A stretch of 46,551 nt of DNA from Octopus bimaculoides. Lineage: Eukaryota. Position 1 is the first letter of the stretch, and every line of letters starts with the position of its first letter. Shown piece by piece: positions 3,731-33,822 of this stretch. Location: the NCBI RefSeq assembly GCF_001194135.2, contig NC_069006.1:764517-811067 (forward strand), given 5' to 3'. The notes below the pieces were generated by a model that had not been told where the DNA came from, did not search any database, and saw only the letters and a program-made list of their open reading frames with translations. Made by a program: the position numbers and the translations under genes.

Positions 3731-4870
3731 ATTTTGTACATACCTCTCTATAATATACACATTAGAAATGTGTGTGTGTGTGTGTGTGTACATACTGACA
3801 CACCCACAAACAAACATCTTAACTATTTTCCAAAAGTGATGATAACCACAGCCTCTCATTATATCTTTTATAATAATAATAATCCAAGACAAGAGATGAA
3901 ACAATGTTTCTGCTTTCTGATTGGATAATAAAACTCTTCACTTTACTCCTTCTTCTTCATTCTTTCTTTCTTGTTTTTTTTTACATTCTTAATACCTCAA
4001 TTTCAAAAAAAAAAAAAAACCTCATAAAAAAAAAGAGAAAAAAAAAGAAGAAAACTTCTGCTTCCTTCTTTTCAATACAAAACTTTGCTTTATTTTGCTT
4101 GCCTCTTTGTTAGTCGTTGTTGCTGTTGTTGTTGTTGCAGAATTCAAGTTTCTTTCTTTCTAAATTTTATTTCGAAATTCCTTGTTCATATATTGTTTTT
4201 CAAAAAAAATACATATTCATTTATTTATTTATTAGCTAAAGAATTTCAGAATCATCTTCACATANNNNNNNNNNNNNNNNNNNNNNNNNNNNNNNNNNNN
4301 NNNNNNNNNNNNNNNNNNNNNNNNNNNNNNNNNNNNNNNNNNNNNNNNNNNNNNNNNNNNNNNNNNNNNNNNNNNNNNNNNNNNNNNNNNNNNNNNNNNN
4401 NNNNNNNNNNNNNNNNNNNNNNNNNNNNNNNNNNNNNNNNNNNNNNNNNNNNNNNNNNNNNNNNNNNNNNNNNNNNNNNNNNNNNNNNNNNNNNNNNNNN
4501 NNNNNNNNNNNNNNNNNNNNNNNNNNNNNNNNNNNNNNNNNNNNNNNNNNNNNNNNNNNNNNNNNNNNNNNNNNNNNNNNNNNNNNNNNNNNNTATTATT
4601 CTAAAATTTTTGAATAGTGAGTGTTTGTTTCTACCAAAAAAAATTTGAAATAATGATTTTCTTTTTACGAACATAAGCACAAGGCCACCACCACAAATTG
4701 TTTCGGAGAAGAAGAAGAAAGGAGATAAAGCAAGGGTTAGGGAGATTATGGGGCACGTCGGGTGTAGGGTCGATTATATTGACTACCGATTCCACTAACA
4801 GATGGGTTGGAATGCCACGGTTTTCTATTGACTCCTACCTCCTGCACTAATATTTCAATGAGTCTAAAGT

Positions 4871-6062: not shown

Positions 6063-6235
6063 CACACAAACACAATACACACACANNNNNNNNNNNNNNN
6101 NNNNNNNNNNNNNNNNNNNNNNNNNNNNNNNNNNNNNNNNNNNNNNNNNNNNNNNNNNNNNNNNNNNNNNNNNNNNNNNNNNNNNNNNNNNNNNNNNNNN
6201 NNNNNNNNNNNNNNNNNNNNNNNNNNNNNNNNATA

Positions 6236-7000
6236 ATTCTCATTCCAGTCGTTAGGTTGCAGGCCATGCTGGGGCACTGCCTTGAAGAATTTTTAGTTGA
6301 ATGAATCAATCCTAGCACTCGTCTTTCTTTTTTAAAGCCTGGTACTTATTCTATCGGTGTCTTTTGCCAGTCTGCTAAGTCACAGGGACATAAACACACC
6401 AACACTGGTTGTCATGTTGTGAGGGGAGCGCAAACACAAAAACTCACACACACATACATATACACGATGGGCTTCTTTCAGTTTCCGTCTATGAAATCCA
6501 CTCACAAAGGCCTCGGTCAGCCTGAGACTAGAATATATATATATATATATCTATATATATGACGGGCTTCTTTTAGTTTCCATCAATCCAATCGTGTTAC
6601 AAGACTTTGGTCAGCCCAAGACTATAGTGGAAGACACTTGCTCAAAGTATTATGCAGTGGGACTGAACCCAGAACCATGTGGTTGGCAAGCAAGCTTCAT
6701 ACCACACAGCTGTGCCTGCACTTATATATATATATATTTTAACCATCACCATCAGTGGGATTGAACCCAGAACCATGTGGTTGGGAGGCAAGCTTCTTAC
6801 CACACAGACACGCCTATGCCTATTGTAGAAGTATGACCAATTTATTGAACATAAACTTTATAACAAAATCTTATATGGACCCCGAAGGGCCAGACGGGCC
6901 TTGGTTGAAAACCACTGTTCTAAAGTACTGTCAATGGATTTGAACCTGGAACTGCATTGTTACAAAGTCAAATTCCTTACCACACAGCCACGCCTGAGCA
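6236..7000 (-). mobile_element. Cluster of SINE family A pieces (body 6236-6530, 5' half 6561-6721, heads ~6753-6820 and ~6935-7000)
   Basis: Repeated gaacccagaaccatgtggttgg..agcaagcttc.taccacacag heads and the 3' domain ggccatgctggggcactgcc. Confidence 0.85.
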
Positions 7001-10205: not shown

Positions 10206-10428
10206 ATGGAAAGAAGAGACAAACTGAACTGATTTGAATATTAATCTGGAGGAAAAAAAAATGAATTTGAAATTGATCGAAACAGAAGCAGATATTGAAC
10301 TGGAAATAAATAAAATAAATTCAGAAAATCAAGAAAAAAAAAAGATAAAAGGAACAATAAAAACAACAACAAAATAGCAACAAAAAAACCCCCATTCCCC
10401 TCCCCCCTAAAATGCAAATTCTGCTGAC

Positions 10429-10531
10429 CTTAGACGACATTTATCGCCATATTTGTTACTGTTTGGTTGGTAAGAGGTGTCTTCACATTGTTCACAGTAT
10501 CGTCCATCAGCACATTCTCTCATTTCATGTC
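10429..10531 (-). CDS. Internal coding exon of a TNF-receptor-superfamily-like protein (part of cysteine-rich domains)
   Basis: Strong acceptor ctctttctttctctttttgcag| and donor AAG|gtcagc. Only one frame is open (phase 1 to 2): (G)HEMRECADGRYCEQCEDTSYQPNSNKYGDKCRL(R/S). The C-x2-C-x4-Y-x4-N-x5-C spacing resembles TNFR CRDs of the CD40/LTBR/RANK type (recognised from memory, not searched). Confidence 0.65.
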
Positions 10532-10605
10532 CTGCAAAAAGAGAAAGAAAGAGTAAGAGACGATGAGAGAGTGAGTTTTAGTGGGAGAATCAAAACTGAA
10601 GGAGA

Positions 10606-10667
<62 letters not shown>

Positions 10668-11288
10668 NNNNNNNNNNNNNNNNNNNNNNNNNNNNNNNNN
10701 NNNNNNNNNNNNNNNNNNNNNNNNNNNNNNNNNNNNNNNNNNNNNNNNNNNNNNNNNNNNNNNNNNNNNNNNNNNNNNNNNNNNNNNNNNNNNNNNNNNN
10801 NNNNNNNNNNNNNNNNNNNNNNNNNNNNNNNNNNNNNNNNNNNNNNNNNNNNNNNNNNNNNNNNNNNNNNNNNNNNNNNNNNNNNNNNNNNNNNNNNNNN
10901 NNNNNNNNNNNNNNNNNNNNNNNNNNNNNNNNNNNNNNNNNNNNNNNNNNNNNNNNNNNNNNNNNNNNNNNNNNNNNNNNNNNNNNNNNNNNNNNNNNNN
11001 NNNNNNNNNNNNNNNNNNNNNNNNNNNNNNNNNNNNNNNNNNNNNNNNNNNNNNNNNNNNNNNNNNNNNNNNNNNNNNNNNNNNNNNNNNGATTGTGTAT
11101 GTACATGAGCTTGCATGTGTGTGTGTGTGTGTGCATGCATGTGTTTGTGTGTGTGTGTGTGTCTGTGTGTGAAGGTCATAGAGAATGAATTGCTTTTTTT
11201 TTTCACTGTGAAAGAAAACTGAATGAGAAATCATTGACATGTGTTTCTATGTACGAGTGAGCATGCATGTGTGTGTGAGGCACATGCC

Positions 11289-14116: not shown

Positions 14117-15542
14117 AGGTGGGGGGTTAGGGTGTATATGTATATTTGGTTAAGGAATATATATATGCATAAATGTTTATGGAGAGTGCATGTGTATATA
14201 TATATCTATATATGTGTATGTGTGTAAGTATATGCATATGTTTATATGTGTGTATATATGTATGAATGTGTATATATGTGTGTATCTATGCCTCTGTGTG
14301 TGTGTATATATATACACATACATACATAGAAGGGAGGCATGCACTAATGTAATGGTATATGAAGGAGAGGTGAGAGGAAAAGAAAAGAGGAGCGGGGGGA
14401 AGCTTGAGACAGAGAGGCTGAGGGGGAAGGATAAGCGGGGACGGAGTGGAGGAGATGGGTGTAGAGGAAAATGTTAGATGTGAGATGAAAGAGACGAAGA
14501 TTAGAGGAAACAAATAATGGAAGATTAACCAGAATCGTTGATTTATACATATTTAACTATGCGTGTACATACATACGTATACATATGGGTATATGTACGT
14601 ATATATATATATGTGTGTGTATGTGTATATATATATGTATATATATATGTATACATATATATGTATATTTATGATGNNNNNNNNNNNNNNNNNNNNNNNN
14701 NNNNNNNNNNNNNNNNNNNNNNNNNNNNNNNNNNNNNNNNNNNNNNNNNNNNNNNNNNNNNNNNNNNNNNNNNNNNNNNNNNNNNNNNNNNNNNNNNNNN
14801 NNNNNNNNNNNNNNNNNNNNNNNNNNNNNNATACCTACTCCTACAGCCTTTTGATATATGGTAAATTAAATGTGTATCTTTCTCTATATATTTACATTAA
14901 TATCTGTATTTATCTGTATACAAACACACACATATATATAGACACACATGTATACATATGTGTGTGTGTTTGCATGTACATACATACATGCATATGGAAT
15001 GTGTATGTGTATACAAATATATATATATATAGAAGCATGTATGAGTATATGCATATATATGTATATGTTGATATATATATGCTTATTTAAACATATATAC
15101 CTATGTATATATGTAAATATATATACATACATACACACACATACATAGAAATATATCTAAATATATACATATCTATATATATATATGCATGCACGCACAC
15201 GCACACATAGAAATATATCTAAATATATACATATATATATATATGCACGCACACACATGCCCATCAAATATATTTAAGCCTTTATATATTTACTCTGACC
15301 TTCACCCTCAAACTCCCCACCCCCTCTTCCTCTGTGACCTTATCATTACCCCGCACCCCACTACACCATGCACCCCCCCATATCAACACAATAGCCACTC
15401 TGGACAGACTATTGGTCTCTTCATCTTCAGGGTACACCACGACATCAACCACAACCACTATCATCATCATCATCATCACTTCTATATTTACCCTAGTATC
15501 GCTATTCTCATATGTGTGTGTGTGTACGTATATAAATGTGTA

Positions 15543-16142: not shown

Positions 16143-16595
16143 NNNNNNNNNNNNNNNNNNNNNNNNNNNNNNNNNNNNNNNNNNNNNNNNNNNNNNNNNN
16201 NNNNNNNNNNNNNNNNNNNNNNNNNNNNNNNNNNNNNNNNNNNNNNNNNNNNNNNNNNNNNNNNNNNNNNNNNNNNNNNNNNNNNNNNNNNNNNNNNNNN
16301 NNNNNNNNNNNNNNNNNNNNNNNNNNNNNNNNNNNNNNNNNNNNNNNNNNNNNNNNNNNNNNNNNNNNNNNNNNNNNNNNNNNNNNNNNNNNNNNNNNNN
16401 NNNNNNNNNNNNNNNNNNNNNNNNNNNNNNNNNNNNNNNNNNNNNNNNNNNNNNNNNNNNNNNNNNNNNNNNNNNNNNNNNNNNNNNNNNNNNNNNNNNN
16501 NNNNNNNNNNNNNNNNNNNNNNNNNNNNNNNNNNNNNNNNNNNNNNNNNNNNNNNNNNNNNNNNNNNNNNNNNNNNNNNNNNACATATATATATA

Positions 16596-17595
16596 TGTTT
16601 ATTCATCATAGTCCCCCAGACAATAGCAGAGGAATTCAAAACAGATTGCCCCTGGGAGCTCCTCTATGCTGATGACCTGGGCCTCATAGCAGAAACACTA
16701 CCGGAACTAGACAAGAAATTTCGGGCGTGGAAGCAAGGTTTAGAATCAAAAGACCTTAGAGTCAATGTAGCAAAAACCAAAGTTCTAGTAAGTAAGAAGG
16801 CGAACTCATCACACACCCCCTCAGGTAGATGGCCCTGCTCGATCTGTAGAAAAGGTGTAGGTAGAAACTCCATAAGATGCACCCAGTTTAAGCTATGGAT
16901 ACACAAGAGGTGCAGCAACATCAAAGGAAGATCAACTGGGAAGATAGCTTTCGTGTGCGGCAGATGCACAGGGGCAATAAACACCACAGATGCTCAGGAA
17001 ACAGATTCCATCACACTCCAGGGGGAGAAACTAGAAGTAGTTGATAGCTTCCCTTTCCAAGGTGACCAAGTCTGTAGTGGGGGTGGATGCTCAGAGAGTG
17101 TTACCACTAGAATAAGAATAGCCTGGGCAAAGTTTAGAAAACTTCTACCCCTACTGGTGACAAAGGTAGACTGTATGATGTCTGTGTGCAAACTGCCATG
17201 CTTCATGGCAGTGAGACATGGGTCGTGACTGTGGAGGACATGCGTAAGCTTGAAAGAAATGAAGCTAGCATGATCCGCTGGATGTGTAATGTCAGTGTGC
17301 GCACACGACAGAGTGTAAGTGTCATGAGAGAAATGTTGGACATAAGAAGCATCAGATGTGGCATGTAAGAGAGACATTGGCGTGGTACGGTCAAGTACTA
17401 CGGATGGACGAGGAGAGCTGTGTGAAGAAGTGCCACTCCCAAACAGTGGAAGGAATCCGGGGTAGAGGGAGACCCAGGAAGACATGGGATGAGGTGGTCA
17501 AGCATGGCCTTCGAACGTTGGGCCCCACAGAGGCAATGGCGAAAGACCGAGTCCTCTGGAGATATGCTGTGACTGCAAAGACCCGGCAAATAAAG
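16596..17595 (+). pseudogene. 5'-truncated RTE-clade non-LTR retrotransposon ORF2 (RT C-terminal half, PHD-type finger, C-terminal domain)
   Basis: WELLYADDL catalytic motif, LRVNVAKTKVLV, EKLEVVDSF..GD, RIRIAWAKFRKLLPLL, AMLHGSETW, WYGQVLRMDE, GRGRPRKTWDEVVK, DRVLWRYAV. Frameshifts at ~17165 and ~17375 and an in-frame TAA at 17366-17368. Confidence 0.93.
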
Positions 17596-18149
17596 TTAGT
17601 TCATGGCTCTATCCTACACCAGTTTTGCATAACCAGCCCCAGCCCATTCAAAAGTACCTTGGATTGTAGGGCGACTTGCTGTGCTTGAGGAGACCTATTG
17701 AGTCAAGTACATCAACATCAAAATGAAAACCAAATGAAAATTGTAATTGTGATACCTGTGCCGGTGGCACGTAAAAAGCACCATCCAAACGTGGCTGATG
17801 TCAACGCCACTTTGACTGGCTTCTGTGCTGGCGGCACATAAACAGCACCAACCGATAGTGGACATAGCCAGCCTCCTCTGGCTACCGTGCTGGTGGCACA
17901 TCAAAAGTACCCGTACATAAAAACACATCCATGCTGGTGCTGTGTAAATGCACGCATACAAGTGGCACATGGAAAGCACACACTGTAAAATGGTTGGTGT
18001 TAGGAAGGGCATCCAGCTGCAGAAACCATGTCACAGCAGACATTTGGAGTCTGGACTGCTACCAGCTGGCCAGTACCATGTCAGACCATCCAACCCATGC
18101 CAGCATGGGAAACAGATGTTAAATGAGGATGATGATGATGATGATGATG
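16596..18149 (+). mobile_element. RTE LINE 3' portion (ORF2 remnant, structured 3' UTR, (GAT)n tail)
   Basis: The ORF2 remnant is followed by a UTR ending ccaacccatgccagcatgg...gttaaatga(gat)n. The same terminus recurs in several other copies in the window. Confidence 0.9.
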
Positions 18150-21176: not shown

Positions 21177-22182
21177 CGTACACACAAATATATAAGATGT
21201 ACTCACACAATATACATGCATACATATGTGTTTGTATATGTGCCTATATTGTTATCTCTCTCTCTCTCTCTCTCTCTGTCTAGGTATCTATGTAAATATG
21301 TACAGCCATGTGTGTATATTGAGATATGTGTATATATATATGTGTGTGTGTGTGTGTGTGCAAGTGTCTGTTAAATATGTTGAAGGCCCAAGACGGGTGG
21401 CGTTGGAGGAAAGGTCAAATCTGTGTCTTCTGTCCCCCCCCCCCNNNNNNNNNNNNNNNNNNNNNNNNNNNNNNNNNNNNNNNNNNNNNNNNNNNNNNNN
21501 CCCCCCCCTTCTCCCTTCTCGCTCTCTCTCTCCCTCCCTCCCTCTTCTCCTCTTCGTCCTTCCAGATGGTGGGAGGTGGGAGGTGGTCAGAAGAGTGAAG
21601 GCAACACTCTTTCAGCTGGTCTGCAATCATCTCCTTCCAATTACTGATCCACCACCACCACCGCCACCACACCACTGCCATCATCATCATCACCATTTCT
21701 TAATAACCACTGCTTTCACCAACACCACCAGAGTTACTATCATCACAATAACCACCACCACCACCATCACTACCACCACCATCACTACCACCACCACTCT
21801 AACAGAACCACCACCACCACCACCACCATCATCATAACTATAACAATCACCATAATCCACCACAGCCATCATCATCAGCATAATCAATATCACCCGCACC
21901 ACCACCATCTCCACCACTGCCGCCGCCACCGGTGCTGATTGTAGTGAAAATGGTTGTTCAGTAACCCTAGGTCAGTTCTGATTAAGCAAACTCCATCTAT
22001 GTCTATCACATCTTTTCAATAGGGGTGGGCATATCCTACCGCAACATTCAATCTATCATTGTCTTCTTTTTCCTTATTTTGTTTCCAAGATGAAAGAACC
22101 TGGTAAAATGAGGCAGATTTGGCTGTTGCTTCTAGCAGACGAAGCAACCACATAGAGGTTTGTGTGGTCTTTTTTTTTTAAA

Positions 22183-22552
22183 TCTTTTATTTGTTTCAGT
22201 CATTTGACTGCGGCCATGCTGGAGCACTGCCTTTAGTTGAACAAATCGACCCCAGGACTTATTCTTTGTAAGCCTAGTACTTATTCTAACGGTGTCTTTT
22301 GCTAAACCGCTAAGTTACAGGGATGTAAACACACCAACATCGGTTGTCAAGCAATGGGGGAGGGGACAAACACAGATACACAAATATACATATATATATC
22401 TACGACGGGCTTCTTTCAGTTTCCATCTACCAAATCCACTCACAAGGTTTTGGTTGGCCCAAGGCACTTGCCCAAGGTGCCACATAGTAGGACCGAACCT
22501 GGAACCATGTGGTTGGTAAGCAAGCTACTTACCACACAGCCACTCCTGCGCC
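22183..22552 (-). mobile_element. SINE family A, near full length
   Basis: From the tail ttgtttcagtcatttgactgcggccatgctggagcactgcc to the head accacacagccactcctgcgcc, with a small internal deletion. Confidence 0.92.
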
Positions 22553-22557
22553 TATAT

Positions 22558-22924
22558 CTTCTAAGTTTTACTTGTTTCGGTCATTAGACTGCGGCCATGC
22601 TGGGGCATAGCCTTGAAGAATTTTTAGTCAACTGAATCGACCCCCAGTACATATTTTCTTTTTGAAGCCTGGTACTTGTTCTATCAGTCTCTACTGCTGA
22701 ATCGCTAAGTTATGGGGATGTAAGCACCTGTTGTGAAGCGGTGGGTGGGTGGGGGTAGACAAATACAGATATGAAGTCACAGACACATGCAAATTATACA
22801 TATGTGTGTGTGTGTGTGAGTGTATGTGTGTCTGTGTATATATATATGTGTATGTGAGTATATATGTTTGTGTGTGTGTGTGAATGTATATGTATATGTA
22901 TATATGTGTGTGAGTGTGTGTATA

Positions 22925-22958
<34 letters not shown>

Positions 22959-23121
22959 GGATGGGCTTCTTTCAGTTTCCGTCTATCAGATCCACTCACC
23001 ATTCTTTGGTCGGCTCGAGGCTATAGTAGAAGATACTTGCACAAGGTGCCACACAGTGGGACTGAGCCAGGAACCGTGTGGTTGGGAAGCAAGCTTCTTA
23101 CCACACAGCCACACCTGCCCC
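22558..23121 (-). mobile_element. SINE family A, full length with an expanded internal microsatellite
   Basis: Same domains as the adjacent copy, with an ~170 bp (TG/TA)n insert at ~22790-22960. Confidence 0.9.
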
Positions 23122-23729
23122 TGGTGTATTATGCTTTGCGATTTGAGTGGAGGTGGTGGTGGTGGTGGCATTTTCAGGGGTAGCGAAGAATCATCTGTGG
23201 TGCTGTGTGAAATCCAGGGGTTGTGTTGTCGTGTATCTAGGAATACATTATGTAATTTGTCCTTCAACATATAACAAAACGATAAGAATGTATGGCCCTG
23301 AGAGAAGTTTGGCTGCTATTTCTAGCGGACTGAACAAATACACAGAAGCAACATGGTGTGTTGTGGAGGAAATTTTGCTTTGGATGGTGATGAAGAATTT
23401 CTCTTTGGGGTATTGTGGTGTGGATCTGAGGGTGGGGGGTTGTGATTGCGGGGACAGAAATATTCTGATGGTGGTGGTGGTGGTGGTGATGGTAGCAGTG
23501 GTGGTGCATGGTCTATACTAACGATCAGCTGATGGTAATGCAGTAGCAGCGTGACGATAGCGACGGCGTTACCAGAATCACCACCACCAACAACAACAAC
23601 AACGGCGGCAGCAGCAGCAGCTGGTCGGAACCAGAAATAATCAACAGAACTGAAGAAATAATCATAATCTTAATTCATCTTAATCTTGTAAGATGCCTAA
23701 AATATTACATACTTCTGTACACACACATC

Positions 23730-24076: not shown

Positions 24077-24384
24077 TAAAACATATATATATGCATACAT
24101 AAAACTATATATATACATATATATGAAACTATGCACACACACACACACACACATATGCATACACCTATACATGTGTGTGGGTGTGTGCGTGTATTTATCA
24201 TTGTTATCATTGTTTACATATGTACATATATCATCCTTTCGTTTGTTTTTCATGCTCAGGTTTTACAAATGAGAAAAATAGAATTCACTATTTACAGAGA
24301 AGAGCATTTATTTATTTAGTTTTGTTTTGTTATTTGCTAAAAAAAAACAAAAACTACAGCGACTCCATACTTTACAAATGTGGA

Positions 24385-25181
24385 TTAGCAACAGTAAGAG
24401 TACACCCAGTACATGTAAAACAGTGAATTAGCAACAGTAATGCCACACTTTTATAACAGTATATTAGCAAAAACAAAACGAATGAAACATTGTATTAACA
24501 ACAGCAAGGAAAACACAAGAAGGATACTGTATTAGCAACAAGAACACAAATAAAAGAGAGATGTAGGCAACAGCAACGAGAACTTCAAAAGGATGGCTTA
24601 TTAGCAACAAGTGGACAAACCAACTGATAACATGTTAGGAACATGAACACTAATAAGGAGGACAATGTGTTAGCAACAGCCACAAAAACATAACAAAACA
24701 ATGCATAAGCAACAGTAATAAGTGCACACTATGAAAAAGTGTATTAGCAACAAGTACAGAAATAAACAGTGTATTAGCAACCACACAACTATCAAACAAT
24801 AACACAAATATCAAAAAGCGTGTTAGCAACAAGTACAGAAATAAACAGTAACAAGAACACAAATATAGAAGGGTGTGTTAGCAACAAGTACAGATATTGT
24901 GTTAGCAACCACAAGAACACAACTATCAAGGAGTGTGTTAGCAACAAGTACAGAAATAAGCAGACAGTGTATTCGTAACAGTAACAAGAACACAAATACC
25001 CAAGGGTGTGTTAGCAACAAATACAGATATGAAGTGTGCTAGCAACACAAATATAAAAGAGTGTGTTAGCATCAAGTGCAGAAATGATAAAGACAGTATA
25101 TTGGCAACGGCAAAACTAGAACACAAATGTAAAAGAGTGTGTTAGCAACAAGTACAGAAATAAACAGTGTGTTAGCAACAG
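24385..25181. repeat. Irregular array of 23 TTAGCAAC-type motifs with variable spacers
   Basis: Counted by eye: 14 exact TTAGCAAC and 9 one- or two-mismatch variants, spaced ~24-55 nt apart. Sub-units aagtacagaaataaacag and aagaacacaaata are shuffled between spacers. Confidence 0.9.
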
Positions 25182-25614
25182 CACGAAGAACACAAAAAGA
25201 AACAATGTAAAACAGAAGCGACAGAGATGAAGTCTTTCACCTTCGTTATAAAATGTCTGATATGAATATCTCAACACCTCACACTGGCAGATATTGGTTA
25301 ATGTTTTGCACCTCAGCATGGGGGGGGGGTGAAGGGGAGGAGAGGGGGTAACAGGGGATGGCGAGAATAAAAAAAACAAGAAGCAAAACTAACAACAATA
25401 GCAACAATCAATGTTTCCTGTCTATTCGAAATGCAACACATATACCGATTCTGCCATGCATGCATATACGTTTACGCACGCATCACATACCAAATTTGCA
25501 GCACACACACACACACACACACCACATCATACTATGTTACATACCACATAACACACTATTGAACAATCATAGGCATAAGAAATATAATTAGCAACACTGT
25601 TTCATTTATGTTGG

Positions 25615-26100
25615 TTAATTAGTATTGTTGTTGTTGTTGTTTAATGCTGTTGTCATGGTTACTGTTGTGTTTTTTGTTGGTAGTAGTATTAGTAGTAGTA
25701 GTTGGTGCTCTTGTGGTTGGTTGTAATAGTAGTAGCATTGTAGTGTGACCGGTACTTCAAGCGGTGGTGTTGGTAGTAGTAGTTGTGGTAATAGTAGTAG
25801 TACTAGTAGTAGCAGATATGGTGTTGATAATAGTGGTAGTGGTGGTAATTGTGTTGGTGGTGGCAGAAGTGATGGCAGTAGTATTAGTGGTGGTGGTGAT
25901 AGTAGTTGTAGTGGTAGTAGTAGTAGTAGTAGTAGCATTAGTGGTGTTGATAGTTGGTAGGAGTAAGTGATGTTGGTGGTGGTAGTAGCAGAGATGGTAT
26001 TGGTGGTAGTAGTAGCAGTGGTGTTGGTAGGAGTAAGTGATGTTGGTGGTGGTAGTAGCAGAGATGGTATTGGTGGTAGTAGCAGCAGTGGTGTTATTCA
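25615..26100. repeat. (GGT/AGT)n low-complexity tract with an ~70 bp tandem duplication
   Basis: gttggtaggagtaagtgatgttggtggtggtagtagcagagatggtattggtggtagtag occurs twice (~25953 and ~26023). Confidence 0.85.
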
Positions 26101-26592
26101 TTAATTTTCGTCACATGTCTGTCTTTTGCAGTTGCTGTTCTACAATCAACGCACCCCCCCATCCCCCCATCACATCGCAACTACGACCACCACCCTACAC
26201 ACAGCCGTCCCCACCAACAGACCCCCCCCAACCTACCTCCACCACCGTCGTCATCAAGTTTGTAAACTCATTAAATATTTACTGTGACAGACTGTAATAA
26301 TAAGATTAAGCAACTGTAATGAGGGGCTCCAGCATGGCAGAGACGCAGAGACATGTCTGCTGCTGTTAGCGGTGGTGGTGGTGGTGGTGGTGGTGGTGGT
26401 GGTTCCAGAGGAAAGAACAGAGGTGGCGGAATCTAATGACAATGGTGATGATGATGATGATGATGCATAATTTGTAGCTGATGGTGTTATGATACTTTTT
26501 TTGGAAGTGATGGTGGTGGTGGTAGTGATGGTAGTGGTGCTGGTGGTGGTGCTGGTGGTGGTGATGGTGGTGTTAGTAGAGATGGCAGTGAT

Positions 26593-27464: not shown

Positions 27465-27905
27465 TAAGAATCNNNNNNNNNNNNNNNNNNNNNNNNNNNN
27501 NNNNNNNNNNNNNNNNNNNNNNNNNNNNNNNNNNNNNNNNNNNNNNNNNNNNNNNNNNNNNNNNNNNNNNNNNNNNNNNNNNNNNNNNNNNNNNNNNNNN
27601 NNNNNNNNNNNNNNNNNNNNNNNNNNNNNNNNNNNNNNNNNNNNNNNNNNNNNNNNNNNNNNNNNNNNNNNNNNNNNNNNNNNNNNNNNNNNNNNNNNNN
27701 NNNNNNNNNNNNNNNNNNNNNNNNNNNNNNNNNNNNNNNNNNNNNNNNNNNNNNNNNNNNNNNNNNNNNNNNNNNNNNNNNNNNNNNNNNNNNNNNNNNN
27801 NNNNNNNNNNNNNNNNNNNNNNNNNNNNNNNNNNNNNNNNNNNNNNNNNNNNNNNNNNNNNNNNNNNNNNNNNNNNNNNNNNNNNNNNNNNNNNNNNTAA
27901 TAATG

Positions 27906-28869: not shown

Positions 28870-29025
28870 TTTCTTTCAGTTTCCGTCTACCAAATCCACT
28901 CACAAGGCTTTGGTTGGCCTGGGGCTATAATAGAAGACACTTGCCCAAGGTGCCATGCAGTGGGACTGAACCCAGAACCATGTGGTTGGTAAGCAAGCTA
29001 CTTAATACACAGCCACTCCTGTGCC
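28870..29025 (-). mobile_element. SINE family A, 5' half
   Basis: ttctttcagtttccgtctaccaaatccactcacaaggctttgg ... cagccactcctgtgcc. Confidence 0.9.
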
Positions 29026-29083
29026 TATATATATACATGTATGTGTGTGTGTAGTGAGAGAGATAGAGAGAGAGAGATGTATA

Positions 29084-29476
29084 CTCTTTCACTTGTTTCA
29101 GTAATTTGACTGCGGCCATGCTGGAGCACCACCTGGAGTTGAGCAAATTGACCCCAGGACTTATTCTTTGTAAGCCTAGTACTTATTCTATCGGCCTATT
29201 TTGCCGAACCGTTAAGTTACGGGGACGTAAACACACCAGCATCGGTTGTCAAGCGATGTTGGGGGGACAAACACAGACACACACAAACATATACACACAC
29301 ACACACATATATACAACGGGCTTCTTTCAGTTTCCGTCTACCAAATCCACTCACAAGGCTTCGGTTGGCCTGAGGCTATAGTAGAAGACACTTGCCCAAG
29401 GTGCCACGCAGTGGGACTGAACCCGGAACCATGTGGTTGGTAAGCAAGCTACTTACCACACAGCCACTACTATGCC
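29084..29476 (-). mobile_element. SINE family A, full length and little diverged
   Basis: All domains are intact and many CpGs are retained. Confidence 0.93.
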
Positions 29477-29998: not shown

Positions 29999-31246
29999 CA
30001 TCAACAGTTTTTTTACTCCCACGCTGATTAACAAACCCCAAACCCACCCCAACAACACACCCAAACCCCAGATATAGAATCACAAAACCCCAAATCCTCA
30101 GATCTTTTTGACAACGAATGCGAGAAAGTTCTCCAAAAATGGTAACAATAAAACAATTTAAAAAAAAAATTTACCGCACCCAAGTTAACAAAGAACTTAC
30201 TAGATCTACGAACTAAAATTTAGATTATTAGAAAATTAAAAAAGAATAAATTAAACTGATTAGAACTACCAGTGAAGTCATTCTTTTTCTTTTTTCAAAT
30301 ATACCCAACTGTACCAAGGATCTCACACATTTTCATATATATATAAGTATATGTGTGTGTATGTATGNNNNNNNNNNNNNNNNNNNNNNNNNNNNNNNNN
30401 NNNNNNNNNNNNNNNNNNNNNNNNNNNNNNNNNNNNNNNNNNNNNNNNNNNNNNNNNNNNNNNNNNNNNNNNNNNNNNNCTTGTACACAAAATGCAATGC
30501 AAAATATCCAATGATATGAAACTGTTAAGCATAAATAAACTGAATTTCTAATATTTCTATAAATTTTATAAACTGCCAAACAGAAGATGGAGTTTTCTTC
30601 TCTGCATAAATTTAACGATGAAAGTTCCATTCTTCCTTATATTATATTTTTTTCTGAAGAAACCAAATTGTGTTCCAAAACTTCACAACACAATGAACAT
30701 CTTCACTTCAATTCCAACCGTGTAGTTCTTTTCCATTTTTGAAGTGGAGAATAAAATGTGGCAATGTAGTCTTTGCTGCTTTTGTGATCCATTATGGTAA
30801 GTATTTATTCCTTTCTGGCCCACAAATGTGAATTCTACTGAAGCTGAGGAAGCAGCATTGTTCCTAGGAATGGTTGGAATTAAATCATTCAAATGATATA
30901 GTTCTTTGTAGCTTGATGTGGGATTCTTTATTTCAGCTAACAATGCAATAATTGATTCAGAAACCACCACCATCATTTTAATGTCCATTTGTCCACTCAT
31001 ACGGGGGACAAACAGAATTTGCTGAGGCAGACTTTTCTATGGCTAGATGCCTTTCCTGTCACCAACCCTAACCTTTTCACAAGCAAGGTTATATGCATAA
31101 GTATGCATACATACACTCCAGAAACAGCTGTCAAGTAAAAAACAATGCATTTTCTCCTTAGAATTCTGTATACTTTTTACTCTACATAAATTTGTCTATA
31201 TCTATCTATCTGCACACACACACACACACACATATATAGCAGCAGC

Positions 31247-33513: not shown

Positions 33514-33822
33514 CACACTTTGGGAAAGTGTCCTCTACTATAGCCCTGGGCCAAGGAAAGCCTTACGAGTGGATTCAGTGGACAGAAACTGAAAGAAGTC
33601 CGTCGTATGCGTATATATGTGTTTCCTCTCCCACTACTGCTTGACAACTGGTGTTGTCGTGTTTATGTCCCTGTAACTTAGCAGATTGGCAAAAGAGACC
33701 AAGAGAATAAGCATTAGGCTTAAAAATGTAAGTACATGGGTTGATTCATTCAACTAAAAATTCTTCAAAGCAGTGCTCCAGCATGGCCACAGACTAATGA
33801 GTGAAAGAAGTAAAGGGTAAAA
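33514..33822 (+). mobile_element. SINE family A, headless body
   Basis: gggaaagtgtcctctactatagccctgggcc ... gcagtgctccagcatggccacag. Confidence 0.85.

What the first reader, a model, noticed from the sequence alone, without database searches (positions are those of the whole stretch)
24385..25181. Array of 23 TTAGCAAC motifs with variable spacers: branch-point/STAR-site cluster or RFX-site cluster?
Seen: a 9-10 nt core (GTRTTAGCAACA) recurs 23 times in ~800 bp while the spacers vary in length (~15-45 nt) and sequence. The array is most regular at 24740-25180 and decays leftward. The core appears better conserved than the spacers, unlike the simple repeats elsewhere. Established: on the minus strand the core reads UGCUAAC/UGCUAAU, matching the metazoan branch-point consensus (CURAY) and one mismatch from the STAR-protein (QKI/How/SF1) ACUAAY site. 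On DNA, TAGCAAC is an RFX X-box half-site. Inference: if the host gene is transcribed from the minus strand, as the TNFR-like exon suggests, this is a U-rich intronic tract with about 20 branch-point-like motifs (a splicing-factor sponge or decoy). Alternatively it is a homotypic RFX enhancer or an old minisatellite.
Basis: partly seen in the sequence, partly recalled or inferred. Interest (0 to 1): 0.7.

Follow-up and report, generated by a model that had tools for sequence, protein, structure and literature searches.

The report
Old octopus minisatellite with conserved core
An 840-base stretch of an octopus-like genome is a decaying tandem repeat of about 35 bases per unit, arranged in pairs and fours, whose 12-14-base core has changed less than the rest; nothing I could test shows it to be a cluster of splicing or transcription-factor sites, so it is most likely an ordinary minisatellite.

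Summary
TTAGCAAC occurs 14 times exactly, and 23 times with up to 2 mismatches, at 24385-25179. All copies are on the + strand, against 1.7 exact copies expected in the whole window.

The spacers are not unrelated. The array is 23 head-to-tail units, mean 35.8 nt. They alternate between an A type (core + AAGTACAGAAATAAAC) and a B type (core + AGTAACAAGAACACAAATATAAAAG). That makes about 12 dimers of 55-79 nt. The right half is a younger 133-nt higher-order repeat and the left half is older and decayed.

The core really is better conserved than the rest (column permutation p about 0.002). But B-type cores decay, and one is deleted by slippage.

The functional readings fail their defining tests:
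- No X-box is present, only same-strand half-sites.
- No ACUAAY occurs on the minus strand.
- The 'TNFR-like exon' has no Pfam match and no homologue.

No other copy of the array or its flanks lies in the window. No orthologue could be reached with these tools.

Verdict: a degenerate compound minisatellite with a conserved box, in a genome where tandem repeats are abundant. Interest is low. A selected cluster of binding sites is not excluded (about 10%).

The parts
24379..25215 (+). Whole array: 23 head-to-tail units of about 35 nt. Each starts with the box AGTGTRTTAGCAACA, and all are in the same orientation. Base composition on the + strand is A 47%, T 18%, G 18%, C 16%.
24355..24378 (+). 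Partial unit at the left edge. It is a B-type spacer end with no core before it, so the array starts inside a spacer.
   Evidence: family D8: 24366-24393 is 79% identical to 24725-24752
24379..24737 (+). Older left half: units 1-10, i.e. five A+B dimers with a period of about 69 nt. Spacers are close to random identity. Cores are TTAGCAAC x5, TTAGCAAA, TTAACAAC, TAGGCAAC, TTAGGAAC and TAAGCAAC.
   Evidence: (families D4, D7: spacing 69, 69, 74)
24738..25215 (+). Younger right half: units 11-23, organised as a 133-nt higher-order repeat (A1-B1-A2-B2) of about 3.5 copies. Spacers are conserved in register.
   Evidence: (period 133, 79% matches, score 364; period 55)
24823..24877 (+). Unit 13: an A unit fused to a B spacer that has lost its core. 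A 14-nt deletion lies between the direct repeats AACAGT...AACAGT. This shows that losing a core is tolerated and that indels arise by slippage.
   Evidence: read directly from the sequence
25587..25596 (+). Possible orphan core (ATTAGCAACA), 370 nt to the right of the array. Membership is uncertain.
   Evidence: E = 7.5, not significant on its own

Best explanation
This is a degenerate compound minisatellite with no demonstrated function.

How it formed (inferred).
1. A unit of about 35 nt was duplicated in tandem by replication slippage or unequal sister-chromatid exchange.
2. Neighbouring units diverged into an A and a B type.
3. The A+B dimer (about 69 nt) was then amplified, giving the left half.
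4. Most recently a 133-nt tetramer was amplified at the right end.
5. Since then the array has decayed by substitutions and by short deletions and duplications at microhomologies in its A-rich spacers.

Why the box is better kept (inferred, not shown). The 12-14-nt box GTGTRTTAGCAACA is the only part of the unit that is not low-complexity. I take its better preservation to come from array dynamics and uneven mutation. The A-rich spacers are prone to slippage. The box also serves as the register for unequal exchange, as described for conserved boxes at monomer junctions of satellite DNAs.

What is shown. The tandem, same-strand, hierarchical structure. The homology of spacers within each type. 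The age gradient from right to left. The slippage-type indels. The failure of the X-box and QKI site definitions.
For: - Regular head-to-tail units, all on one strand, mean spacing 35.8 nt.
- Two alternating spacer types. Twelve dimers align, with conserved blocks in the spacers as well (ACAGAAATAA, GAACACAAATAT).
- Periods of 30, 55 and 133 nt from Tandem Repeats Finder. The tetramer alignment is in register.
- Age gradient: non-core identity is 0.77 on the right and 0.47 on the left.
- Cores are not uniformly protected. B-type cores have 9/86 mismatches against 2/96 for A-type (Fisher p = 0.026). In the young repeat the B2 core is deleted once, mutated twice and intact once in four copies.
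- Indels are flanked by short direct repeats (units 13 and 19).
- Spacing is not a multiple of 3, so the array is not coding.
- The surrounding window is full of tandem repeats: 289 rows at score >= 30 and 26 at score >= 100. Octopus genomes are reported to hold 35-44% repeats, in O. minor dominated by simple repeats (14.7% of that genome) and transposable elements (PMC6279123).
- Conserved short motifs inside otherwise divergent satellite monomers, lying at monomer junctions, are a described phenomenon (PMC3694981).
Against: - The box is more conserved than whole-unit duplication followed by uniform neutral decay predicts. In the left half the spacers are almost at shuffled identity (0.58 against 0.50-0.53), yet A-type cores are 0.95 identical. 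The column permutation gives p about 0.002.
- No indel falls inside any of the 23 cores, although most left-half units differ in length from their neighbours (31-43 nt).
- My explanation for this (array dynamics, slippage-prone spacers) is inferred and not tested.
- No comparison across species or within a population could be made.
Confidence: 0.72

Rival explanations
1. The array is a selected cluster of about 20 same-orientation DNA sites for a sequence-specific DNA-binding protein. Candidates are an RFX monomer on RGYAAC half-sites or, more plausibly for an asymmetric 12-14-nt box, a multi-zinc-finger protein. It would act as an enhancer, silencer or insulator.
For: The box is conserved above the rest of the unit. 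Conservation peaks over about 9 nt and tapers on both sides, as a binding-site logo would. There are 21 RGYAAC half-sites.
Against: There is no X-box, even with degenerate consensus forms. All sites point the same way, whereas RFX binds inverted half-sites (PMC2375033). B-type cores decay and one is deleted in the youngest part. Copies made by duplication are not independent evidence of selection. No accessibility or binding data exist here.
Confidence: 0.09
2. The array is transcribed from the minus strand as part of an intron or a long non-coding RNA. The U-rich tract with 17 CUAAY motifs would then bind SF1, U2 snRNP or a STAR protein, acting as a sponge or branch-point decoy.
For: The minus strand is 47% U and carries UUGCUAAC/U 16 times, which matches yUnAy. 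The RNA would be less folded than shuffled versions (z = +3.1), so it would be open for binding.
Against: - There is no ACUAAY, the defined QKI/STAR core (PMC2697983).
- Only about 6 of 17 motifs have an AG 15-45 nt downstream.
- The proposed minus-strand exon has no Pfam or homologue support.
- No known RNA family is found in the window.
- A 5-nt match is expected by chance somewhere in a 35-nt unit on either strand.
Confidence: 0.05
3. The array is the internal or subterminal repeat region of a mobile element such as a DNA transposon, Helitron or MITE. It would then be one copy of a dispersed family, with the box as a transposase or replication-protein site.
For: Arrays of short protein-binding motifs with variable spacers are typical of transposon subterminal regions (own knowledge). 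Mollusc satellites are often carried by mobile elements (own knowledge). The window is full of mobile-element remains.
Against: - There is no second copy of the array or of its flanks in 46.5 kb, while a true dispersed SINE-like element has 6-13 copies there.
- The flanks carry no terminal inverted repeats.
- There is no inverted partner array: 0 cores on the minus strand in the window.
- An ORF read through the array has no relative among 5.8 billion proteins. This is weak evidence.
Confidence: 0.1

Closest known systems
Minisatellite (VNTR) with higher-order repeat structure
   Same: Head-to-tail units of 10-100 nt on one strand. Monomers are grouped into dimers and tetramers that are more alike than neighbouring monomers. 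There is an age gradient along the array, and the indels are of the slippage type.
   Different: Copy-number polymorphism, the usual hallmark, could not be tested. The array is short (about 0.84 kb) and much of it is decayed.
Satellite DNAs with a conserved box in otherwise divergent monomers (Meloidogyne satellites, CENP-B-box-like motifs; PMC3694981)
   Same: A short motif is kept while the rest of the monomer diverges. Simple and higher-order arrays occur together. The motif lies at unit junctions, where rearrangements occur.
   Different: The array here has a few dozen units at what appears to be a single locus, not a genome-wide satellite. The box has no similarity to the CENP-B box. Its role in exchange is inferred here, not shown.
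RFX X-box (RTNRCC N1-3 RGYAAC; PMC2375033)
   Same: AGCAAC fits the RGYAAC half-site. There are 21 copies.
   Different: The second, inverted half-site is absent in every unit. All half-sites are in direct orientation.
QKI/STAR response element (NACUAAY plus UAAY half-site; PMC2697983) and the branch-point sequence yUnAy
   Same: The minus strand reads UUGCUAAC/U, which contains CUAAY and UAAY.
   Different: G replaces the A of ACUAAY in every unit. Transcription, intronic position and a nearby 3' splice site are not established.
Su(Hw) site array of the gypsy retrotransposon and the Xist A-repeat (own knowledge, not tested here)
   Same: Both are arrays of a conserved core of about 12-25 nt separated by AT- or U-rich spacers of variable length.
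   Different: In those cases binding and function are shown by experiment and the arrays are conserved between species. Here neither is known.

Membership tests
Minisatellite / tandem repeat with higher-order structure | Head-to-tail units of 10-100 nt, all in the same orientation | tested here: met
   23 consecutive + strand profile hits at 24380-25193, spacing 35.8 +/- 6.8 nt
Minisatellite / tandem repeat with higher-order structure | Units are homologous over their whole length, not only at a shared motif | tested here: met
   Right half: A-type spacers 0.71 identical against 0.51 shuffled, B-type 0.57 against 0.47. Dimers and tetramers align in register. In the left half the spacers are only marginally above shuffled (0.58 against 0.50-0.53).
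Minisatellite / tandem repeat with higher-order structure | Multimers more alike than adjacent monomers (higher-order repeat) | tested here: met
   Tandem Repeats Finder period 133, 79% matches, score 364, and period 55. Families with spacing 69, 69, 74.
Minisatellite / tandem repeat with higher-order structure | Copy number varies between individuals | not testable with these tools
   No population or second-assembly data could be reached.
RFX X-box cluster | Two inverted half-sites, RTNRCC N1-3 RGYAAC | tested here: not met
   0 matches on either strand. 0 for RYYNYY N1-3 RRNRAC and for GYTNYY N1-3 RRNRAC. 2 for the loosest form, RYNNYY N1-3 RRNRAC.
RFX X-box cluster | RGYAAC half-site present | tested here: met
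   21 on the + strand, 0 on the - strand
STAR/QKI response element | Core NACUAAY with a UAAY half-site nearby, on the transcribed strand | tested here: not met
   ACUAAY 0 times on the minus strand; GCUAAY 16 times
Branch-point / 3' splice-site decoy | yUnAy motif | tested here: met
   CUAAC 10 times and CUAAU 7 times on the minus strand
Branch-point / 3' splice-site decoy | Pyrimidine tract and an AG about 15-45 nt downstream | tested here: inconclusive
   About 6 of 17 motifs have the next AG at +15 to +45. The strand is U-rich but also G-rich.
Branch-point / 3' splice-site decoy | Lies in an intron transcribed from the minus strand | not testable with these tools
   The only proposed exon (10410-10577, minus strand) has no Pfam match and no homologue. 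No transcript data are available.
Mobile-element internal or subterminal repeat array | Other copies with shared flanks elsewhere in the genome | tested here: inconclusive
   None in the 46.5-kb window. The source genome could not be searched.
Mobile-element internal or subterminal repeat array | Terminal inverted repeats or an inverted partner array | tested here: not met
   No inverted match between the flanks beyond microsatellite sequence. No core on the minus strand in the window.
Satellite DNA with a conserved box | A short motif significantly less variable than the rest of the monomer | tested here: met
   Best 8-10-nt window has 2-4 mismatches; column permutation p = 0.001-0.002. Pairwise identities.

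The most novel reading that the evidence does not exclude
The box GTGTRTTAGCAACA is kept by selection. The array would then be a working cluster of about 20 same-strand sites for one sequence-specific nucleic-acid-binding protein. That could be one of the many octopus C2H2 zinc-finger proteins on DNA, or an SF1/STAR-type KH protein on a U-rich minus-strand transcript. It would be analogous to the gypsy Su(Hw) array or the Xist A-repeat.
Probability: 0.1. Interest if true: 0.55.

Novelty: new member of a known kind. Interest (0 to 1): 0.15.

Why it matters
As it stands it matters little. It is one more minisatellite in a genome in which tandem repeats are abundant.

It is useful as a caution. 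A repeated unit multiplies any short motif it happens to carry, so 20 'sites' made by duplication count as one observation.

The one point worth keeping is the measurable excess conservation of a 12-14-nt box in the old half of the array. If orthologous arrays in other octopods keep the box while the spacers drift, this would be a rare non-model example of a selected homotypic site array. It would also give a concrete ligand-fishing target.

Tried and rejected
- Dispersed family within the window. BLASTN of the array and both flanks (word sizes 7-9) and a profile search found no other copy.
- Terminal inverted repeats or an inverted partner array. None found.
- Relatives through proteins.
  - An ORF read through the array (24653-24877, minus strand) had no hit at E <= 10.
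  - The 87-aa ORF spanning the right edge is not on record.
  - So no orthologous locus could be fetched.
- Host gene. The 'TNFR-like' ORF and nine other candidate ORFs had no meaningful Pfam match. The ORF had no homologue.
- Metagenome scan for three spaced GTRTTAGCAAC motifs. It gave 81 loci. Nearly all are regular tandem repeats, most of a single fixed period (14-54 nt), whose spacers are unrelated to these, and none resembles this array. They contain the 11-mer by chance and are not relatives.
- Known RNA families. None in the window.
- Structured RNA. The minus-strand RNA folds worse than shuffles. The 4-bp palindrome TGTT-AGC-AACA inside the box is broken in the roughly half of units that have A at the R position, with no compensating change, so a conserved hairpin is rejected (read from the sequence).
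- Coding repeat. Rejected because unit lengths are not multiples of three.
- Literature. Searches for octopus minisatellites or satellites and for the motif itself found nothing relevant.
- The 19-nt exact match to a SINE tail (22759-22777). Examined and judged too short to indicate an origin.

Full report
**Observation**

The motif TTAGCAAC occurs 15 times exactly in the 46.5-kb window, always on the + strand. Fourteen of these lie between 24385 and 25179. Dinucleotide-preserving shuffles give 1.67 on average and never more than 6. Allowing up to two mismatches gives 23 cores in 24385-25179: 14 exact, 7 with one mismatch and 2 with two.

Core starts are 24-55 nt apart, mean 35.8, sd 6.8. A profile of the unit finds 23 consecutive + strand hits from 24380 to 25193 and nothing significant elsewhere in the window.

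**Anatomy**

Cutting the region at each core shows that the spacers are not arbitrary. Units alternate between two types:
- A type: core followed by AAGTACAGAAATAAAC.
- B type: core followed by AGTAACAAGAACACAAATATAAAAG, or a variant beginning CCACA.

The repeating entity is therefore an A+B dimer of 55-79 nt. Twelve dimers align, and they show conserved blocks in the spacers as well (ACAGAAATAA, GAACACAAATAT).

Tandem Repeats Finder sees periods of 30, 55 and 133 nt in 24724-25158. The 133-nt period has 79% matches and a score of 364, the second-highest score among the window's arrays and the highest for a unit that is not simple sequence. Aligning 133-nt blocks shows an A1-B1-A2-B2 higher-order repeat of about 3.5 copies in the right half. 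In the left half the period is about 69 nt (families D4 and D7).

Non-core pairwise identity is 0.77 on the right and 0.47 on the left. A partial spacer at 24355-24378 shows that the array begins inside a unit (family D8).

Length differences sit at short direct repeats.
- Unit 13 lost its B core by a 14-nt deletion between AACAGT and AACAGT.
- Unit 19 lost 12 nt between two AAC triplets (read from the sequence).

This is the signature of replication slippage. Unit lengths are not multiples of three, so the array does not encode a protein repeat.

**Is the core better conserved?**

Yes, but unevenly. In dimer register:

| Part | Mismatches to consensus |
|---|---|
| A-type core | 2 of 96 cells |
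| B-type core | 9 of 86 cells |
| All other well-aligned columns | 121 of 521 cells |

Permuting columns, which corrects for having picked the best window, gives p = 0.002 for 8 nt and p = 0.001 for 10 nt.

To avoid artefacts of the multiple alignment I also aligned spacers pairwise within each type:

| Half | Spacer identity (shuffled) | A-type cores | B-type cores |
|---|---|---|---|
| Left | 0.58 (0.50-0.53) | 0.95 | 0.78 |
| Right | A 0.71 (0.51), B 0.57 (0.47) | 0.96 | 0.84 |

So a 12-14-nt box, GTGTRTTAGCAACA, evolves several times more slowly than the rest of the unit.

Three points weigh against reading this as site-by-site selection.
- B-type cores are significantly worse kept than A-type cores (Fisher p = 0.026).
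- In the youngest repeat the B2 core is the least conserved element. Its four copies are: deleted, TTCGTAAC, TTGGCAAC, intact.
- In the dimer pair d2/d3 the B cores differ more than their spacers do (read).

**Functional readings**

RFX.
- The X-box is two inverted half-sites, RTNRCC N1-3 RGYAAC (PMC2375033).
- The array has none, and none for the looser forms RYYNYY or GYTNYY N1-3 RRNRAC.
- It has 21 RGYAAC half-sites, all on one strand.

STAR/QKI.
- The defined element is NACUAAY plus a UAAY half-site (PMC2697983).
- The minus strand has no ACUAAY. It has GCUAAY 16 times.

Branch point.
- The minus strand does read UUGCUAAC/U 16 times and is 47% U.
- This is a 5-nt pattern copied along with the unit.
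- Only about 6 of 17 motifs have an AG 15-45 nt downstream.

Transcription from the minus strand.
- This was inferred from a 'TNFR-like exon'. The matching ORF (10410-10577, minus strand) has no Pfam match at E <= 1.
- The ORF shares no words with any of 5.8 billion proteins.
- No Rfam family is found in the window.
- The minus-strand RNA would fold less well than shuffled versions, z = +3.1.
- The small palindrome TGTT-AGC-AACA inside the box is broken in about half of the units without compensation.

**Context**

The window is a draft scaffold with 11 N gaps. It is crowded with micro- and minisatellites: 289 Tandem Repeats Finder rows at score >= 30. It carries a SINE-like element in 6-13 diverged copies. 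It also carries a LINE-type reverse-transcriptase and PHD fragment whose closest named relatives are from Octopus vulgaris and O. bimaculoides, at 65-80% identity. An octopod origin is therefore supported.

Octopus genomes are reported to be 35-44% repeats, in O. minor dominated by simple repeats (14.7% of that genome) and transposable elements (PMC6279123).

The array and its flanks have no second copy in the window. The flanks carry no terminal inverted repeats.

**Search for relatives**

No tool here searches eukaryotic genomes by DNA.
- The protein route failed.
- A metagenome scan for three spaced boxes returned 81 loci. Nearly all are regular tandem repeats, most of a single fixed period, with unrelated spacers. 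They are chance carriers of the 11-mer.

**Explanation**

The best-supported account is a compound minisatellite. A unit of about 35 nt was duplicated in tandem and diverged into two types. It was then amplified as a dimer, and later as a tetramer at the right end. Since then it has decayed by substitution and slippage.

The conserved box is real. I attribute it, by inference, to two things:
- Uneven mutation. The spacers are A-rich, low-complexity and prone to slippage.
- The box acting as the register for unequal exchange. This has been described for conserved motifs at monomer junctions of satellite DNAs (PMC3694981).

Confidence in this account is 0.72. The rivals are a selected DNA site cluster (0.09), a mobile-element repeat region (0.10) and a minus-strand RNA sponge or decoy (0.05).

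**Novelty and verdict**

This is a new instance of a well-known kind of sequence. Interest is low (0.15). The most novel reading still open is that the box is a selected binding site repeated about 20 times (probability about 0.1). The comparisons and assays listed under next steps would settle it.

Noticed in passing
window 16620-17690 (+): Fragment of a LINE-type retrotransposon: the end of a reverse-transcriptase domain followed by a PHD finger. The closest named relatives are from Octopus vulgaris and O. bimaculoides (65-80% identity). It is interrupted upstream by an N gap (16143-16582).
   Followed up: partly
window 22560-22745 and 22960-23140; other copies e.g. 6248-6710, 22185-22553, 28871-29467, 33516-33814, 44556-44929: A dispersed SINE-like element in two halves, with 6 and 13 further matches in the window at 72-89% identity. 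The two halves are often separated by a TG/TA microsatellite.
   Followed up: partly
It has no Pfam match at E <= 1 and no homologue among 5.8 billion proteins. It lies next to a TG microsatellite and an N gap.
   Followed up: yes
window 25620-26100 and 26340-26590: G/T-rich blocks made of (TGG/TAG/TGT)n, including a 70-nt unit duplicated at 98% identity (25953-26095). Strand composition flips from the A/C-rich array to these G/T-rich blocks within 400 nt. No inverted homology to the array was found.
   Followed up: partly
window 25017-25035 and 22759-22777: A 19-nt exact match (ACAAATACAGATATGAAGT, E = 1.4e-4) between unit 18 of the array and the tail of a SINE-like copy 2.2 kb upstream. It could be chance or a hint at where the A-type spacer came from.
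   Followed up: partly
window 25382-25408 and 25587-25596: (AGCAACAAT) x3 and an isolated ATTAGCAACA lie 170-370 nt to the right of the array. They may be relics of still older units. Neither is significant on its own.
   Followed up: no
window 4265-4593, 6086-6232, 10668-11090, 14677-14830, 16143-16582, 21445-21500, 27473-27897, 30368-30479, 38347-38635, 42792-43265, 45045-45129: Eleven runs of N: the window comes from a gapped draft scaffold. Most gaps are flanked by microsatellites, so repeat arrays in this region may be under-represented or collapsed.
   Followed up: no
loci L001-L081 (metagenome contigs): A scan for three spaced GTRTTAGCAAC motifs returns 81 unrelated microbial or environmental tandem repeats, most of a single fixed period (14-54 nt). 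This shows how easily a very large database yields 'arrays' of any 11-mer.
   Followed up: yes
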